Shown: one piece after another, positions 43,560 through 58,398 of the stretch
How positions within the stretch are numbered: the stretch's first letter is position 1
Layout: each line of letters begins with the position of its first letter
Assembly (NCBI RefSeq): GCF_963853765.1
Contig: NC_088858.1
Coordinates: forward strand, 16,182,001-16,246,000
DNA length: 64,000 bases
Reading direction: 5' to 3'
Source: Magallana gigas
Taxonomy: Eukaryota
The notes under the pieces: generated by a model
Told to the model about the DNA's origin: nothing
The model's database searches: none
What the model saw: the letters and a program-made list of their open reading frames with translations, nothing else
Translations under genes and position numbers: made by a program

Positions 43560-44148
43560 ATGCGAGAAAGGATGTCCCTTTCAAAATATAAATCGAATCG
43601 GGGGACTACACATTTTGCTCGAATTGCCCGGGCGTTATTGGGTCCCTGCATTGATTTACTGCGCGAAGTTCTCGCAAAAGAGATATCTCCGCCTGGATTG
43701 GAAAAGAAAGTGAAAGATTACATACGTGACAACAGAAAACCTTTTATCAGTGAAAAACAAAAACAGCTCGTCTATAACAAAAAGTACTCCGACTTTGACA
43801 TCACGTTGCTCTATTTCCTCTTACGTAACATTTGTTCAATTCATCCACACAAAAACAAATGGGGGAACGATCCAGAAACAACTGATAAAAGTGTGTCAGC
43901 AAACATAGAACGAGTTCGTATTTCTAGAAACGAATGGTATGGACATGCTACGGATTTTTCTCTCTCGGACTCAGATTTTGAACGAAAGTGGAATCATATT
44001 TCTCAAATCGTAAAAGAGTTGGAATGTTACCTGGGGACTGGAACCAAGTACCAGGACACTCTGATTTTGTTAAAAACTTGTTTTATGGACCCTGAATCGA
44101 TAGAGCTCTACATAGATACACTCTTGACTGATATTACATATCTAAAAG
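43560..44148 (+). CDS. First coding exon: DZIP3/hRUL138-like HEPN domain
   Basis: Acceptor TTTGTAG at 43540 and donor AAAG|GTAACAG at 44149. The protein shows F.R..R.LL, DFDITLLYFLLRNIC, P..KWG..P...D.S and IER.R..RNEWYGH (Rx5H HEPN motif). Confidence 0.9.
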
Positions 44149-56100: not shown

Positions 56101-58398
56101 AGTAGTGGTGCAGATATTCAGCTTTGCATGGAGGACGGTACAAGTCCTCTTACTGCAGCTTGTTTCAACGGACATGATAGCGTTGTACAACTTTTACTGA
56201 GTAATGGAGCAGACATTAGTTTATGCCAGAAAAACGGAGCCAATCCTCTCTATTTAGCTTGTGAAAATGGACATGATACCACTGTACAACTTTTACTGAC
56301 TAATGGAGCAGACATTAATTTTTGTATGGAGGACGGAGCCAGTCCTCTCTATATAGCTTGTCAAAACGGACATTATAGCGTTGTACAACTTTTACTGAGT
56401 AAAGGAGCAGACATTAATTTATGTATGGAGGACGGAGCCAGTCCTCTCTCTACAGCTTGTCAAAACGGACATGATAGCACTGTACAACTTTTACTGAGTA
56501 GTGGAGCAGACATTCAGCTTTGCATGGAAGACGGAACCAGTCCTCTTACTGCAGCTTGTATCGACGAACATGATAGCGTTGTACAACTTTTACTGAGAAA
56601 TGGAGCAGACATTAATTTATGCAATAAAAACGGAGTCAGTCCTCTCTATGTAGCTTGTGAAAACGGACATGATAGCACTGTACAACTTTTACTGAGTAGT
56701 GGAGCAGACATTCAGCTTTGCATTGAGGACGAAACCAGTCCTCTTACTGCAGCTTGTTTCAACGGACATGATAGCGTTGTACAACTTTTACTGAGTAATG
56801 GAGCAGACATTAATTTATGCAATAAAAACGGAGCCAGTCCTCTCTATGTAGCTTGTCAAAACGGACATGATAGCACTGTACAACTTTTACTGAGTAGTGG
56901 AGCAGACATTCAGCTTTGCATGGAGGACGAAACCAGTCCTCTTACTGCAGCTTGTTTCAACGGACATGATAGCGTTGTACAACTTTTACTGAGTAGTGGA
57001 GCAGACATGAATTTATGTAAGAAAAACGGAGCCAGCCCTCTCTTTATAGCTTGTCAAAACGGACATTATAGCGTTGTACAGCCTTTACTGAGTAAAGGAG
57101 CAGACATTAATTTATGTATGGAGGACGGAGCCAGTCCTCTCTATATAGCTTGTCAAAACGGACATGATAGCACTGTACAACTTTTACTGAGTAGTGGAGC
57201 AGACATTCAGCTTTGCATGGAGGACGGAACAAGTCCTCTTACTGCAGCTTGTTTCAACGGACATGATAGCGTTGTACAACTTTTACTGAGTAATGGAGCA
57301 GACATTAATTTATGCCAGAAAAACGGAGCCAGTCCTCTCTATGTGGCTTGTGAAAACGGACAATATACCACTGTACAACTTTTACTAAGTAGTGGAGCAG
57401 ACATTCAGCTTTGCATGGAGGACGGAACCAGTCCTCTTACTGCAGCTTGTTTCAACGGACATGATAGCGTTGTACAACTTTTACTGAGTAATGGAGCAGA
57501 CATTAATTTATGCCAGAAAAACGGAGCGAGTCCTCTCTATGAAGCTTGTGAAAACGGACAAGATACCACTGTACAACTTTTACTGAGTAGTGGAGCAGAC
57601 ATTAATTTATTTGAGGAGGACGGAGCCAGTCCTCTTTATATAGCTTGTCAAAACGGACATGATAGCGTTGTACAACTTTTACTGAGTAGTGGAGCAGACA
57701 TTAATATATGTATGAAAAACGGAGCCAGTCCTTTCTATATAGCTTGTCAAAACGGACATTATAGCGTTGTACAACTTTTACTGAGTAGTGGAGCAGACAT
57801 TAATTTATTTGAGGAGGACGGAGCCAGTCCTCTTTATATAGCTTGTCAAAACGGACATGATAGCGTTGTACAACTTTTACTGAGTAGTGGAGCAGACATT
57901 AATTTATGTTTGAAAAACGGAGCCAGTCCTCTCTATATAGCTTGTCAAAACGGACATTATAGCGTTGTACAACTTTTACTGAGTAATGGAGCAGACATTA
58001 ATTTATGTAAGAAAAACGGAGCCAGTCCTCTCTATATAGCTTGTCAAAACGGACATGATACCACTGTACAACTTTTATTGAGTAGTGGAGCAGATATTCA
58101 CCTTTGCATGGAGGACGGTACAAGTCCTCTTACTGTATCTTGTTTCAACGGACATGATAGCGTTGTACAACTTTTACTGAGTAATGGAGCAGACATTAAT
58201 TTATGCCAGAAAAACGGAGCCAGTCCTCTCTTTATAGCTTGTGAAAACGGACATGATACCACTGTACAACTTTTACTGAGTAGTGGAGCAGACATTCAGC
58301 TTTGCATAGAGGACGGACCAAGTCCTCTTACTGCAGCTTGTTTCAACGGACATGATAGCGTTGTACAACTTTTACTGAGTAATATGATACGGACATGA
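43560..58398 (+). CDS. Spliced NLR-like gene: HEPN (DZIP3-type) - coiled coil - nSTAND3-type NTPase - winged-helix-like region - 24 ankyrin repeats; join(43560..44148,44414..44455,44719..44760,45025..45066,45331..45372,48233..48277,54284..58398), 4917 nt, 1638 aa
   Basis: All six introns are GT..AG and phase 1, and the joined sequence is one open frame. An in-frame TGA at 43551 precedes the ATG. Further small exons in 48.3-54.2 kb cannot be excluded. Confidence 0.8.
44414..44455 (+). CDS. 42-nt micro-exon 1 (ESFGELQTDVTYIK)
   Basis: TTTTTACAG|...AAAAG|GTAATAG, phase 1-1. Confidence 0.82.
44719..44760 (+). CDS. 42-nt micro-exon 2 (EGFGELQTDVTNIK)
   Basis: TTCTTATAG|...AAAAG|GTAACAG, phase 1-1. 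Confidence 0.82.
45025..45066 (+). CDS. 42-nt micro-exon 3 (ESFGELQTDVTYIK)
   Basis: TTTTTACAG|...AAAAG|GTAATAG, phase 1-1; identical to micro-exon 1. Confidence 0.82.
45331..45372 (+). CDS. 42-nt micro-exon 4 (EGFGELQTDVTYLK)
   Basis: TTCTTACAG|...GAAAG|GTAATAG, phase 1-1. Confidence 0.82.
45870..47110. mobile_element. Hairpin-bearing unclassified element(s) nested inside the HINE
   Basis: Palindrome 45870-45961 (39-bp arms, 38/39 match) and palindrome 46513-46589 (32-bp arms, apex GCGAGGCAAAGCCGAGC). The sequence is unrelated to the HINE core, which resumes near 47345. Confidence 0.6.
47112..47184. repeat. (TA)n microsatellite
   Basis: Read directly. Confidence 0.97.
47196..47271. repeat. 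Perfect 24-bp inverted repeat with AT-rich spacer (collapsed MITE-like remnant)
   Basis: AAAACAGAATGCGACAGTCCAAAT at 47196-47219 and its exact reverse complement at 47248-47271. Confidence 0.85.
47909..47950 (+). pseudogene. Fifth 42-nt micro-exon copy with mutated acceptor (CAA instead of CAG)
   Basis: TACTACAA|AAGGGTTTGGAGAGTTGCAG...ATGAAGG|GTAACAG would encode EGFGELQCGFTNMK; the donor is intact. Confidence 0.7.
48233..48277 (+). CDS. 45-nt micro-exon (EDVEEMKKSNKISTQ)
   Basis: TTCTTGCAG|...CTCAAG|GTATAG, phase 1-1, preceded by another copy of the repeated intron unit. Confidence 0.75.
49385..49556. mobile_element. Fragment of a dispersed repeat with reiterated TTGACCC(GG) motifs; a related fragment lies at ~53505-53610
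   Basis: Repeated GAAAATTGACCCG / GGGTCAATT / TTCAACG motifs at two places in the same intron; family not determined. Confidence 0.35.
49657..49734. repeat. Perfect 33-bp inverted repeat around a C12 loop
   Basis: CATATTTATTCTTTATATTTATATGTTTCAATG (49657-49689), then C12, then its exact reverse complement (49702-49734). A 30-bp direct duplication adjoins it on the left. Confidence 0.92.
50968..51038. repeat. 36-bp direct tandem duplication
   Basis: TTTTTTAGGCATAAACAATTCTGCTTCATTGAATC occurs twice. Confidence 0.9.
53755..53899. repeat. 72-bp direct tandem duplication
   Basis: ATGGTTTTACATTGTATAAAGACTC... at 53761 and 53833. Confidence 0.9.
54284..58398 (+). CDS. Terminal exon: nSTAND3-type NTPase, helical/winged-helix-like region, ankyrin array
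   Basis: Acceptor TTTTCATTATAG at 54283 (phase 1). Walker A is VIVAGHSGSGKS and Walker B is ICVFNDPLG, followed by SCR, FPLLCKLY and FYHDF motifs. Then come 24 x 33-aa repeats of type GxSPLxxACxNGHxxxVQLLLxxGADI. Confidence 0.9.

What the first reader, a model, noticed from the sequence alone, without database searches (positions are those of the whole stretch)
43560..58398. Candidate animal Avs/NLR-like system: HEPN RNase effector, nSTAND3 switch and ankyrin sensor in one spliced gene
Seen in sequence: two separate track ORFs 10 kb apart splice, through five phase-1 micro-exons, into one 1638-aa frame. It has an intact HEPN Rx5H motif (RNEWYGH), a P-loop (GHSGSGKS), an FYHD motif placed like the MHD motif of STAND winged-helix domains, and 24 ankyrin repeats. 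Established knowledge: STAND proteins follow an effector-NTPase-repeat sensor layout and oligomerise on ligand binding. HEPN domains are dimer-activated RNases (RNase L KEN domain, Cas13, bacterial toxins). Bacterial Avs proteins couple STAND oligomerisation to nuclease effectors. Inference: a single-chain pathogen sensor that triggers RNA cleavage, outside the canonical NACHT-LRR class. Such architectures are probably a multigene family in bivalves; I know of no functional characterisation.
Basis: partly seen in the sequence, partly recalled or inferred. Interest (0 to 1): 0.85.

Follow-up and report, generated by a model that had tools for sequence, protein, structure and literature searches.

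The report
Oyster HEPN–STAND–ankyrin immune-sensor-like gene
This is a real, transcribed oyster gene that joins a predicted RNA-cutting head, a short coiled-coil stalk built from tiny exons, an NLR-type ATP switch and a long ankyrin array; it belongs to a large family that has been catalogued but never tested, and this copy has lost the end of its ankyrin array.

Summary
The two ORFs splice through five phase-1 micro-exons, all GT..AG, into exactly 1638 aa. Pfam assigns HEPN_DZIP3 (E 7e-28), nSTAND3 (E 2e-24) and about 24 ankyrin repeats. The RNEWYGH, GHSGSGKS and FYHD residues are conserved or invariant across relatives. Stranded RNA-seq shows exon-specific coverage, the micro-exon junctions, and reads that run from the last micro-exon into the first 30 nt of the NTPase exon. 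However, 93-97% identical paralogs could have supplied some of these reads.

New points. The 42-nt micro-exons each encode two heptads, so the stalk is probably a coiled coil; paralogue protein models carry 0-11 such repeats. The stop at 58396 comes from a 43-nt insertion. Ten more ankyrin repeats and the family's canonical C-terminus lie downstream, out of frame and behind a nonsense codon, so this copy is truncated.

The genome (probably Pacific oyster) holds at least 113 HEPN_DZIP3 exons. HEPN_DZIP3 fusions to STAND NTPases and ankyrins, expanded in oysters, were described in 2013, 2021 and 2022. The gene is therefore a new member of a known but uncharacterised kind. It is neither an Avs nor a NACHT-LRR member. 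Sensing and RNA cleavage remain inference.

The parts
43560..44148 (+). Exon 1: start codon and HEPN_DZIP3 domain (aa 1-196), ending in a helix that leads into the stalk
   Evidence: Pfam PF18738 E 7.2e-28. AF2 pLDDT 86.7, all-helical. Foldseek matches only the human and mouse DZIP3 HEPN region, E 2e-6, TM 0.65. VIA-align top hit is the Csm6 HEPN domain, Z 8.7. Strand-specific RNA depth is 20-50x.
43926..43946 (+). HEPN catalytic motif RNEWYGH (R123, N124, H129; Rx5H)
   Evidence: R123, N124 and H129 are at least 90% conserved in 83 family representatives.
44414..44455 (+). Micro-exon 2, 42 nt, phase 1, ESFGELQTDVTYIK (two heptads)
   Evidence: AG acceptor and GT donor. RNA joint 44148>44414. 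Identical in sequence to micro-exon 4, so reads cannot tell the two apart.
44719..44760 (+). Micro-exon 3, 42 nt, phase 1, EGFGELQTDVTNIK
   Evidence: Splice sites. RNA joints 44760>45331 and 44760>48233.
45025..45066 (+). Micro-exon 4, 42 nt, phase 1, ESFGELQTDVTYIK
   Evidence: Splice sites. RNA joints 44148>45025 and 45066>45331.
45331..45372 (+). Micro-exon 5, 42 nt, phase 1, EGFGELQTDVTYLK
   Evidence: Splice sites. RNA joint 45372>48233 in all four runs.
47909..47950 (+). Degenerate sixth 14-aa unit (KGFGELQCGFTNMK) with no AG acceptor; probably a dead exon
   Evidence: Sequence at the acceptor position reads acaA instead of acAG. No listed joint uses it.
48233..48277 (+). Micro-exon 6, 45 nt, phase 1, EDVEEMKKSNKISTQ; last stalk exon
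   Evidence: Splice sites. The exact 45-mer is unique in the genome, with one 2-mismatch copy on C8. The loose end behind 48277 equals window 54284 onward.
54284..58398 (+). Exon 7: nSTAND3 NTPase, helical/winged-helix arm and 24 in-frame ankyrin repeats, then the stop
   Evidence: Pfam PF20720 E 2.1e-24. AF2 pLDDT 88.3, pTM 0.86. Foldseek matches NLRP9, NOD2, Apaf-1, Dark, SAMD9, Avs4, CED-4 and EfAvs5 at E 4e-6 to 1e-4. AFDB clusters named nSTAND3 match with TM up to 0.76.
54406..54429 (+). Walker A / P-loop GHSGSGKS (aa 309-316)
   Evidence: G42, G45, G47 and K48 are invariant in 67 relatives.
54565..54567 (+). Walker B aspartate (VFNDP, D362)
   Evidence: At least 90% conserved.
55189..55200 (+). 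FYHD (aa 570-573), an MHD-like motif on the winged-helix part
   Evidence: F303 and H305 invariant, D306 at least 90% conserved. It lies in the strand-helix region after the helical domain of the AF2 model.
55986..58381 (+). In-frame ankyrin array, 24.2 units of 99 nt
   Evidence: TRF. Pfam Ank/Ank_2. Residue variation concentrates at the hairpin and first-helix positions.
58384..58426 (+). 43-nt partial-unit insertion that shifts the frame by +1 and creates the TGA at 58396-58398
   Evidence: Direct reading of the sequence. The phase break between the two TRF arrays falls here.
58427..59461 (+). Out-of-frame remainder of the ancestral last exon: 10 ankyrin units, a TAA nonsense codon at 59036-59038, then the canonical family tail and stop (YDPDSYF...MIFKN*)
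   Evidence: Frame translations. The nearest paralogue, L003, ends its intact 1431-aa exon with the same tail. AATAAA at 59501.

Best explanation
The locus is one transcribed seven-exon gene, probably of the Pacific oyster. It encodes a cytosolic STAND (NLR-like) protein with four parts: an N-terminal DZIP3-type HEPN domain with an intact RNase motif; a stalk of 14-residue two-heptad modules, each encoded by its own 42-nt phase-1 micro-exon; an nSTAND3 P-loop NTPase with helical and winged-helix domains; and an ankyrin-repeat array.

The domains, motif integrity, splicing and expression are shown. The mechanism is inferred by analogy with Apaf-1 and NLRs, bacterial Avs, RNase L and SAMD9. In the resting state, the ankyrin array and the ADP-bound NTPase (FYHD acting like the MHD motif) would hold the protein closed. 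A ligand bound by the ankyrin surface would release nucleotide exchange and oligomerisation. That would bring HEPN heads together in pairs and complete the composite R/H active site. The active nuclease would cut host or viral RNA, stopping translation or killing the infected cell.

Because each micro-exon is a multiple of three in the same phase, stalk length can vary without breaking the frame. The gene belongs to a lineage-specific, birth-and-death family. This copy has lost its last 10 ankyrin repeats and the canonical C-terminal tail to a frameshift.
For: Gene model: it reproduces exactly, with canonical splice sites, and its boundaries match NCBI oyster protein models.

Expression: depth is stranded and exon-specific. 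Joints are GT..AG. Ten reads plus one 149-nt contig run from 48277 into the sequence at 54284. Run X1 holds contigs identical to exon 1.

Domains: Pfam HEPN_DZIP3, nSTAND3 and Ank are all far above cut-off.

Motifs: R123/N124/H129, Walker A and B, R398 (SCR), FPLL and FYHD are conserved or invariant.

Folds: the HEPN model matches DZIP3 and Csm6 HEPN domains. The NTPase model matches Apaf-1, NLRs, Avs4, Avs5 and SAMD9.

Constraint: dN/dS is 0.31-0.52 against the nearest paralogues.

Family: at least 113 HEPN_DZIP3 exons, 234 first-look nSTAND3 candidates (21 scored, all above cut-off), and clustered paralogues.

Stalk: F/L/V/I fall at positions 3, 6, 10 and 13 of each 14-mer, and paralogue models carry 0-11 units.

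Analogy: Avs5 NTPases are reported to match the same Pfam family (10.1101/2025.07.08.663546). SAMD9 is a STAND-like antiviral tRNase (PMC10246899). RNase L couples ankyrin sensing to a HEPN-type nuclease (PMC4730318).
Against: No activity, ligand, oligomer or infection response has been measured for any member of this family. The copy is truncated by a frameshift plus a downstream nonsense codon, so its sensor may be impaired. No exact protein match appeared among annotated proteins; the best was 75%. Paralogues 93-97% identical exist. Runs X21 and X22 carry variants shared with the C8:1.46 Mb HEPN-only paralogue, and the 30-mer at the NTPase exon start is identical in two C8 paralogues, so part of the RNA evidence may belong to paralogues. 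DZIP3 itself is known as an RNA-binding E3 ligase, not as a proven RNase.
Confidence: 0.6

Rival explanations
1. This copy is a decaying, transcribed relic of the family. After the distal ankyrin array and C-terminal tail were lost, the product no longer works as a regulated sensor. It may be inert, or a truncated decoy or regulator of its intact paralogues.
For: There are two lesions in the last 1.07 kb: a 43-nt insertion causing a frameshift at 58384 and a TAA at 59036. The canonical tail and stop are out of frame. The nearest paralogue keeps an intact exon ending in the same tail, while another 95% paralogue is broken into three ORFs, which shows ongoing gene death in the clade. No exact annotated protein was returned.
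Against: The 1638-aa frame is open with every catalytic and switch motif intact. dN/dS is 0.3-0.5. The stop lies in the last exon, so nonsense-mediated decay is not expected, and exon 1 is well expressed. Family members with far shorter arrays exist, from 784 to 2190 aa.
Confidence: 0.25
2. The HEPN domain is a non-catalytic RNA- or nucleotide-binding module, as proposed for sacsin and possibly DZIP3. The protein would then act as a scaffold or signalling hub rather than a nuclease.
For: No HEPN_DZIP3 member has a demonstrated RNase activity in the searched literature. Recent work describes the sacsin HEPN domain as RNA-binding (titles). An earlier scan note reports a family member in this genome with a dead active site (untested).
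Against: R, N and H of the Rx4-6H motif are at least 90% conserved across 83 representatives and in 194 of 202 pearl-oyster genes (PMC9646362). That pattern is expected of catalysis rather than mere binding.
Confidence: 0.12
3. The two ORFs are separate genes or the splice model is wrong: the HEPN plus stalk is a short protein and the NTPase-ankyrin ORF has its own start.
For: A HEPN-plus-stalk-only paralogue exists at C8:1.46 Mb (P0121, 258 aa, with no NTPase within 19 kb). Many database models of the family lack the HEPN domain.
Against: Reads and a contig continue from 48277 into the exact sequence at 54284. The NTPase ORF has no ATG near its conserved start, and its frame opens at an AG acceptor in phase 1. 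At least 12 paralogue models join PF18738 and PF20720.
Confidence: 0.03

Closest known systems
Lineage-specific expansions of DZIP3/hRUL138-type HEPN proteins fused to STAND NTPases and repeats in oysters, pearl oysters and cnidarians (PMC3710099 Table 1; PMC9646362; PMC8260672; PMC10236652; PMC8195603)
   Same: The same HEPN family at the N-terminus, a STAND NTPase in the middle, a repeat array at the C-terminus, clustered multi-copy genes, a conserved Rx4-6H motif, and a predicted antiviral or anti-transposon RNase role.
   Different: The published descriptions stress NACHT fusions. Here the NTPase is nSTAND3 with ankyrins, plus a micro-exon heptad stalk that I did not find described. None of these families has been tested experimentally.
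Bacterial Avs5 (SIR2-nSTAND3-TPR/Sel1; 10.1101/2025.07.08.663546; PDB 9jap)
   Same: An effector-NTPase-repeat layout. The NTPase is reported to match the same Pfam family, PF20720. 9jap is recovered by fold search at E 6e-5.
   Different: Avs5 is prokaryotic, with a SIR2 NADase effector and TPR-like sensors. No PADLOC Avs model matches the oyster protein, and a profile of the oyster clade finds no Avs sequence in the PDB.
RNase L (ankyrin repeats, pseudokinase, KEN/HEPN RNase; PMC4730318)
   Same: An ankyrin-repeat sensor and a HEPN-superfamily nuclease in one chain, with the nuclease switched on by ligand-driven self-association and an antiviral outcome through RNA cleavage.
   Different: The domain order is reversed. 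The switch is a STAND NTPase rather than a pseudokinase. The HEPN belongs to the DZIP3 family rather than KEN. The ligand is unknown.
Human SAMD9/SAMD9L (PMC10246899, PMC12680541)
   Same: A large cytosolic STAND-like antiviral protein whose effector is an RNase (a tRNA-Phe anticodon nuclease). SAMD9 structures are among the top fold matches of the NTPase module.
   Different: The effector fold and the overall domain set are different, there is no ankyrin array, and the similarity is at fold level only.
Vertebrate DZIP3/hRUL138
   Same: The only Swiss-Prot fold match of the HEPN model (E 2e-6, TM 0.65, 20-23% identity), and the Pfam family namesake.
   Different: DZIP3 is a RING E3 ligase with TPR repeats, and has no STAND NTPase or ankyrin array.

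Membership tests
HEPN superfamily, DZIP3/hRUL138 family (PF18738) | Match to the family profile above the curated cut-off | tested here: met
   97.6 bits against a cut-off of 27, E 7.2e-28, profile positions 15-142 of 144.
HEPN superfamily, DZIP3/hRUL138 family (PF18738) | Rx4-6H motif, usually with N after R | tested here: met
   RNEWYGH; R123, N124 and H129 are at least 90% conserved in 83 representatives.
HEPN superfamily, DZIP3/hRUL138 family (PF18738) | All-alpha HEPN fold | tested here: met
   The AF2 model is helical with pLDDT 86.7. It specifically matches the DZIP3 HEPN region. The top VIA-align hit is the Csm6 HEPN domain at Z 8.7, and about nine other HEPN proteins are in the top 50. 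Z values are middling for helical bundles, and Foldseek against the PDB found nothing below 1e-3.
HEPN superfamily, DZIP3/hRUL138 family (PF18738) | Metal-independent endoribonuclease activity on dimerisation | not testable with these tools
   Needs biochemistry. The homodimer prediction gave no verdict.
STAND NTPases, nSTAND3 clade (PF20720) | Match to the family profile above the cut-off | tested here: met
   86.4 bits against a cut-off of 27.2, E 2.1e-24, profile positions 1-152 of 155. The best AFDB fold clusters are named nSTAND3, with TM up to 0.76.
STAND NTPases, nSTAND3 clade (PF20720) | Walker A, Walker B, sensor-1-like Arg, GxP-like and MHD-like motifs on an NBD-helical-winged-helix module | tested here: met
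   GHSGSGKS, VFNDP, SCR, FPLL and FYHD are invariant or at least 90% conserved. The fold matches Apaf-1, NOD2, NLRP9, CED-4, Avs4 and Avs5 with probability 1.0.
STAND NTPases, nSTAND3 clade (PF20720) | C-terminal superstructure-forming repeats | tested here: met
   24 in-frame ankyrin repeats.
STAND NTPases, nSTAND3 clade (PF20720) | Ligand- and nucleotide-dependent oligomerisation | not testable with these tools
   Not addressed by any computation run here.
NLR in the strict sense (NACHT + LRR) | NACHT domain above the Pfam cut-off | tested here: not met
   NACHT scores 16.3 bits against a cut-off of 26.7, over the P-loop only.
NLR in the strict sense (NACHT + LRR) | Leucine-rich repeat sensor | tested here: not met
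   No LRR family was reported; the repeats are ankyrin.
Bacterial Avs (AVAST) systems | Match to curated Avs defence models | tested here: not met
   PADLOC: no Avs model matches. The best hit is candidate PDC-S73 at 4.9e-13, over the NTPase only.
Bacterial Avs (AVAST) systems | Prokaryotic gene that protects against phage by recognising a phage protein | tested here: not met
   This is a spliced animal gene with seven exons. Ligand recognition is not testable here.
RNase L / Ire1 KEN nucleases | KEN-type HEPN domain fused to a kinase or pseudokinase | tested here: not met
   Pfam reports neither a KEN (Ribonuc_2-5A) nor a kinase family on any part.

The most novel reading that the evidence does not exclude
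The 42-nt phase-1 micro-exons form a splicing-tunable ruler. Each adds two heptads to a coiled-coil stalk between the HEPN head and the STAND ring. Cassette choice, together with copy-number variation of the 306-bp exon-intron unit, would then produce receptor isoforms with different head spacing or pairing. That would set whether and how HEPN domains meet on oligomerisation. It would be a layer of diversification not described for NLR-like receptors, in a family that would also be the first animal STAND-activated HEPN RNase.
Probability: 0.2. Interest if true: 0.7.

Novelty: new member of a known kind. Interest (0 to 1): 0.42.

Why it matters
Bivalves lack adaptive immunity and interferon, yet they survive dense viral and bacterial exposure. 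Their expanded STAND families are thought to be part of the reason, but none of the HEPN-headed ones has been tested. This locus gives a compact, well-defined gene model with precise catalytic (R123/H129), P-loop (K315) and MHD-like (H572/D573) residues to mutate. It has intact and broken paralogues nearby for comparison. It also has a micro-exon stalk whose length varies between paralogue models. If activity were shown, it would link bacterial Avs-type abortive infection, RNase L and SAMD9 to an invertebrate system. As it stands it is a good test candidate rather than a discovery, because the architecture class is already in the literature.

Tried and rejected
1. A homodimer prediction of the HEPN plus stalk (P0121 residues 1-252, two copies) scored 0.01, which is no verdict. 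I do not use it for or against dimerisation.
2. Foldseek of the HEPN model against the PDB gave nothing below E 1e-3. VIA-align and the AFDB Swiss-Prot library were needed instead.
3. Sequence and profile searches of the PDB found no solved relative of either the HEPN or the NTPase module, only DARPins and generic P-loops.
4. PADLOC returned nothing for the HEPN exon and no Avs model for the NTPase.
5. The last intron is 6006 nt and read laying is limited to 6000 letters on this genome. The single read-laying run also left nothing for the frameshift region or the NTPase exon.
6. I considered alternative splicing among micro-exons 2 and 4 but do not claim it, because the two exons are identical in sequence and reads cannot separate them. 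The 'goes back 42' reads point to extra copies in other alleles or paralogues.
7. I looked for a short intron that would bypass the stop at 58396. No GT..AG pair restores the ankyrin frame.
8. The earlier-findings look-up by place returned nothing. The look-up by word returned only untested titles.
9. The first sequencing-run run failed because the service was busy; the retry worked.

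
Full report
**What is in the sequence.**
The window holds two large plus-strand ORFs at 43560-44177 and 54199-58398. Pfam puts the first in HEPN_DZIP3 (PF18738, E 7.2e-28, 97.6 bits against a cut-off of 27). 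It puts the start of the second in nSTAND3 (PF20720, E 2.1e-24, 86.4 bits against 27.2), followed by ankyrin repeats. NACHT stays under its cut-off at 16.3 against 26.7 bits.

I aligned oyster protein models back to the window by tblastn. This located the exon boundaries and a set of short repeated coding pieces between the two ORFs. Reading the flanks shows canonical AG acceptors and GT donors at each piece, and every junction splits a codon after its first base.
- 43560-44148
- 44414-44455
- 44719-44760
- 45025-45066
- 45331-45372
- 48233-48277
- 54284-58398

A sixth 14-residue unit at 47909-47950 has A instead of G at the acceptor and is probably dead. Nothing else in the window resembles the gene.

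**Which genome.**
The assembly has 564 Mb in 29 contigs, and the window is C6:16182001-16246000. Contig C8 is 51,133,819 bp. That is the same length as the contig carrying several NCBI Magallana gigas proteins, and the RNA runs are labelled as oyster. I infer the Pacific oyster; this is an inference, not a stated fact.

**Transcripts.**
I laid four RNA runs on 43400-49399. In the two stranded poly(A) runs, with about 1% of each read, exon 1 has 12-52x depth on one strand only, and neighbouring intron bins have 0.5-3x.

Joints with GT..AG ends, each with the tool's '+2 cut' note that places it at the predicted sites, are:
- 44148>44414
- 44148>45025
- 44455>45331
- 44760>45331
- 45066>45331
- 44760>48233
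- 45372>48233

Behind 48277, ten reads in X21 and a 149-nt contig in X6 continue with a 30-nt consensus. That consensus occurs once in the window, at 54284, the first base of the NTPase exon.

Four caveats apply.
- Exon 1 has paralogues at 97%, 95% and 93% identity, and the NTPase exon has paralogues at 95%.
- All X21 and X22 reads carry about nine variants shared with the C8:1.46 Mb paralogue.
- The 30-mer at the NTPase exon start is identical in two C8 paralogues.
- Micro-exons 2 and 4 are identical, so joints to them are interchangeable.

Three observations favour this locus.
- Run X1 holds four contigs identical to exon 1 over 43666-44089, with no intron depth beside them.
- X1 also has the 45372>48233 joint.
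- The exact 45-nt micro-exon 6 is unique in the genome, with one 2-mismatch copy on C8.

**HEPN head.**
A library-wide search with exon 1 found 1247 representatives at E up to 1e-3. In an alignment of 83 of them, R123, N124 and H129 are at least 90% conserved. The AlphaFold model is helical with pLDDT 86.7. Against Swiss-Prot models it matches only mouse and human DZIP3, residues 386-561, at E 2e-6 and TM 0.65; the next hits have E near 1.

Against 48,161 solved chains, the best match is the HEPN domain of Streptococcus mutans Csm6 (Z 8.7, 121 residues, rmsd 4.8). Another Csm6, AF_0298, HepS, Swt1, TTHA0048-like 1wwp, AbiF and LsoA are among the top 50. These Z values are middling for helical bundles, and Foldseek against the PDB found nothing clear. 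The fold evidence therefore supports the Pfam call but does not stand alone.

**Stalk.**
Four 42-nt exons each encode E-[S/G]-F-G-E-L-Q-T-D-V-T-x-[I/L]-K. The hydrophobic residues sit at positions 3, 6, 10 and 13, a 3-4-3-4 spacing typical of heptad a/d positions, so each exon adds two heptads. The HEPN model already ends in a helix at 178-194. The exon plus intron unit is a tandem repeat of 306 bp, 4.3 copies, 84% matching. Paralogue models carry 0, 2, 4, 5, 10 or 11 such repeats. Two isoforms of one gene, LOC105344498 X23 and X7, differ by cassette units.

Reads that 'go back 42' from 45372 to 45331 (14 in X21) show molecules with an extra copy, from other alleles or paralogues. That the stalk is a coiled coil, and that its length matters, is inference. 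The dimer prediction gave no verdict.

**NTPase switch.**
In 67 relatives at 24-75% identity, the following are invariant or at least 90% conserved (model residues in brackets):
- G42, G45, G47 and K48 of GHSGSGKS (309-316)
- D95 of VFNDP (362)
- R131 of SCR (398)
- F193-P194 of FPLL (460-461)
- F303, H305 and D306 of FYHD (570-573)

These correspond in order to Walker A, Walker B, the sensor-1 arginine, the GLPL-like motif and the MHD-like motif of NB-ARC/NACHT proteins. That mapping rests on established knowledge of STAND motifs. The model of residues 268-804 has pLDDT 88.3 and pTM 0.86. It matches NLRP9, NLRP2, NOD2, Dark, SAMD9, Apaf-1, Avs4, NRC4, CED-4, NLRC4 and EfAvs5 at E 4e-6 to 1e-4 with probability 1.0.

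In AlphaFold DB clusters, the best hits are proteins named nSTAND3 or DZIP3-like HEPN (TM up to 0.76). These are followed by entries named Mrr restriction endonuclease or DUF4297. I take the latter to be bacterial from my own knowledge of those families; the organisms are not shown.

No solved structure is a sequence relative. PADLOC gives candidate PDC-S73 (4.9e-13) and no Avs model. A 2025 preprint reports that Pseudomonas Avs5 NTPases match PF20720. In one search that Pfam model gave matches in all 14 control prokaryotic genomes, above its cut-off in 7, so low-scoring matches to it are not specific.

**Ankyrin array and the 3' end.**
TRF finds 24.2 units of 99 nt at 55986-58381, and then a second array of 10.1 units at 58389-59383 in another phase. 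Between them, 43 nt (58384-58426) repeat part of a unit. This shifts the frame by +1 and produces the TGA at 58396-58398. In the new frame, ankyrin repeats continue to a TAA at 59036-59038, resume, and end in YDPDSYFSLFVSCQLERVRRMIFKN followed by a stop at 59459-59461. An AATAAA sits at 59501.

The nearest paralogue, at C8:36.02 Mb (95% nt identity), has an intact 1431-aa last exon ending in the same tail. A second 95% paralogue is split into three ORFs. The reference copy is therefore truncated by two lesions relative to the family's canonical end. I found no GT..AG pair that would splice the frame back.

The stop lies in the last exon, so nonsense-mediated decay is not expected. That is an inference from the general rule. 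Whether the lesions are real in other individuals, or in RNA, could not be checked.

Within the 24 in-frame repeats, variation is concentrated at unit positions 2-4, 6, 10, 11 and 14. From my knowledge of ankyrin and DARPin structures, these are the hairpin and first-helix surface. However, only two to four residue states occur at each position, and two unit types alternate. This fits recent unit duplication as well as it fits selection.

**Constraint and family dynamics.**
Nei-Gojobori estimates against the nearest paralogues are:

| Region | dN/dS | dS |
|---|---|---|
| NTPase module (whole) | 0.43 | 0.10 |
| Nucleotide-binding part | 0.31 | not quoted |
| Arm | 0.52 | not quoted |
| HEPN exon | 0.40 | 0.07 |

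This indicates moderate purifying selection over the two lineages combined.

The genome holds at least 113 HEPN_DZIP3 exon matches. It has 234 first-look nSTAND3 candidates, of which 21 were scored, all above cut-off. About 30 NTPase exons share more than 75% nt identity with this one, mostly in clusters on C8, C4 and C1. The window's gene is a dispersed member on C6.

**What is already known.**
- Anantharaman et al. 2013 (PMC3710099, Table 1) list the DZIP3/hRUL138 HEPN family as mostly motif-conserved. They record fusions to ankyrin, NACHT, CARD, Death and LRR, and lineage-specific expansions in Nematostella, the oyster and Capsaspora. They also compare such architectures to bacterial HEPN-STAND proteins.
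- Takeuchi et al. 2022 (PMC9646362) count 202 such genes in a diploid pearl oyster, more than 50 of them fused to NACHT and 194 with Rx4-6H. They suggest degradation of viral or transposon RNA.
- Cnidarian and coral surveys report the same N-terminal domain on NLRs.
- Kaur et al. 2021 (PMC8195603) describe Crassostrea expansions that combine HEPN, STAND NTPases and ankyrins.

I found no functional study of any member, and no mention of the paralogue gene names. Earlier notes of this scan list two more loci with the same architecture in this genome. These are untested titles and I do not count them as evidence.

**Mechanism and verdict.**
Shown: a transcribed gene with intact HEPN, STAND and ankyrin modules, in the effector-switch-sensor order. 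Inferred: ligand binding by the ankyrins, ATP-dependent oligomerisation, pairing of HEPN heads, and RNA cleavage leading to translational arrest or cell death.

The closest working analogies are these:
- RNase L, which also pairs an ankyrin sensor with a HEPN-type nuclease (PMC4730318).
- SAMD9, a STAND-like protein with an RNase effector (PMC10246899).
- Avs5, which shares the Pfam NTPase family.

The gene is not a member of any of those families, nor of NACHT-LRR NLRs. It is a new, and partly damaged, member of a catalogued but uncharacterised kind. The one feature I did not find described is the micro-exon heptad stalk.

Noticed in passing
L001/L002 (G000:C8:1460800-1480799); exon 1 copy at C8:1461020-1461608: A 97% identical paralogue has the HEPN exon and the micro-exon repeats but no NTPase exon within 19 kb. 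It corresponds to a 258-aa database protein (P0121) that reads into an intron. All exon 1 reads in runs X21 and X22 carry variants shared with this copy, so a HEPN-plus-stalk-only protein may be expressed. It could act as a partner or decoy of the full-length receptors.
   Followed up: partly
L004 (G000:C8:36505500-36515499): A 95% identical paralogue of the NTPase-ankyrin exon is split into three ORFs of 454, 466 and 501 aa. It lies beside an intact paralogue at C8:36.02 Mb (L003). This indicates birth-and-death turnover in the cluster.
   Followed up: partly
window 46400-47200 (intron 5): A stretch with very high RNA depth on both strands (thousands in contig depth), many loose ends and multi-mapping reads. 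It is probably a highly expressed repeat or transposon fragment unrelated to the gene. (AT)36 lies at 47112-47184.
   Followed up: no
window 45331-45372: 14 reads in X21 and 4 in X22 contain two consecutive copies of this micro-exon ('goes back 42'). The number of 14-residue modules therefore differs between individuals or paralogues.
   Followed up: no
window 59918-59999 (-): ARAGORN calls a tRNA-Leu(AAG) gene, or a tRNA-derived element, about 460 nt downstream of the canonical stop.
   Followed up: no
window 60409-60924 (+): A 172-aa open frame with a GIY-YIG nuclease domain (Pfam E 4.4e-5), probably a fragment of a mobile element.
   Followed up: no
window 61743-63765 (-): ORFs with integrase (rve, Integrase_H2C2, DUF5641) and Pao retrotransposon peptidase domains, in the GC-richer end of the window. 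This is a BEL/Pao-type LTR retrotransposon. I described it only and reconstructed nothing.
   Followed up: no
window 1-43000: No ORF of 120 aa or more on either strand and no similarity to the gene family. This is a long stretch without obvious coding sequence upstream of the gene.
   Followed up: no
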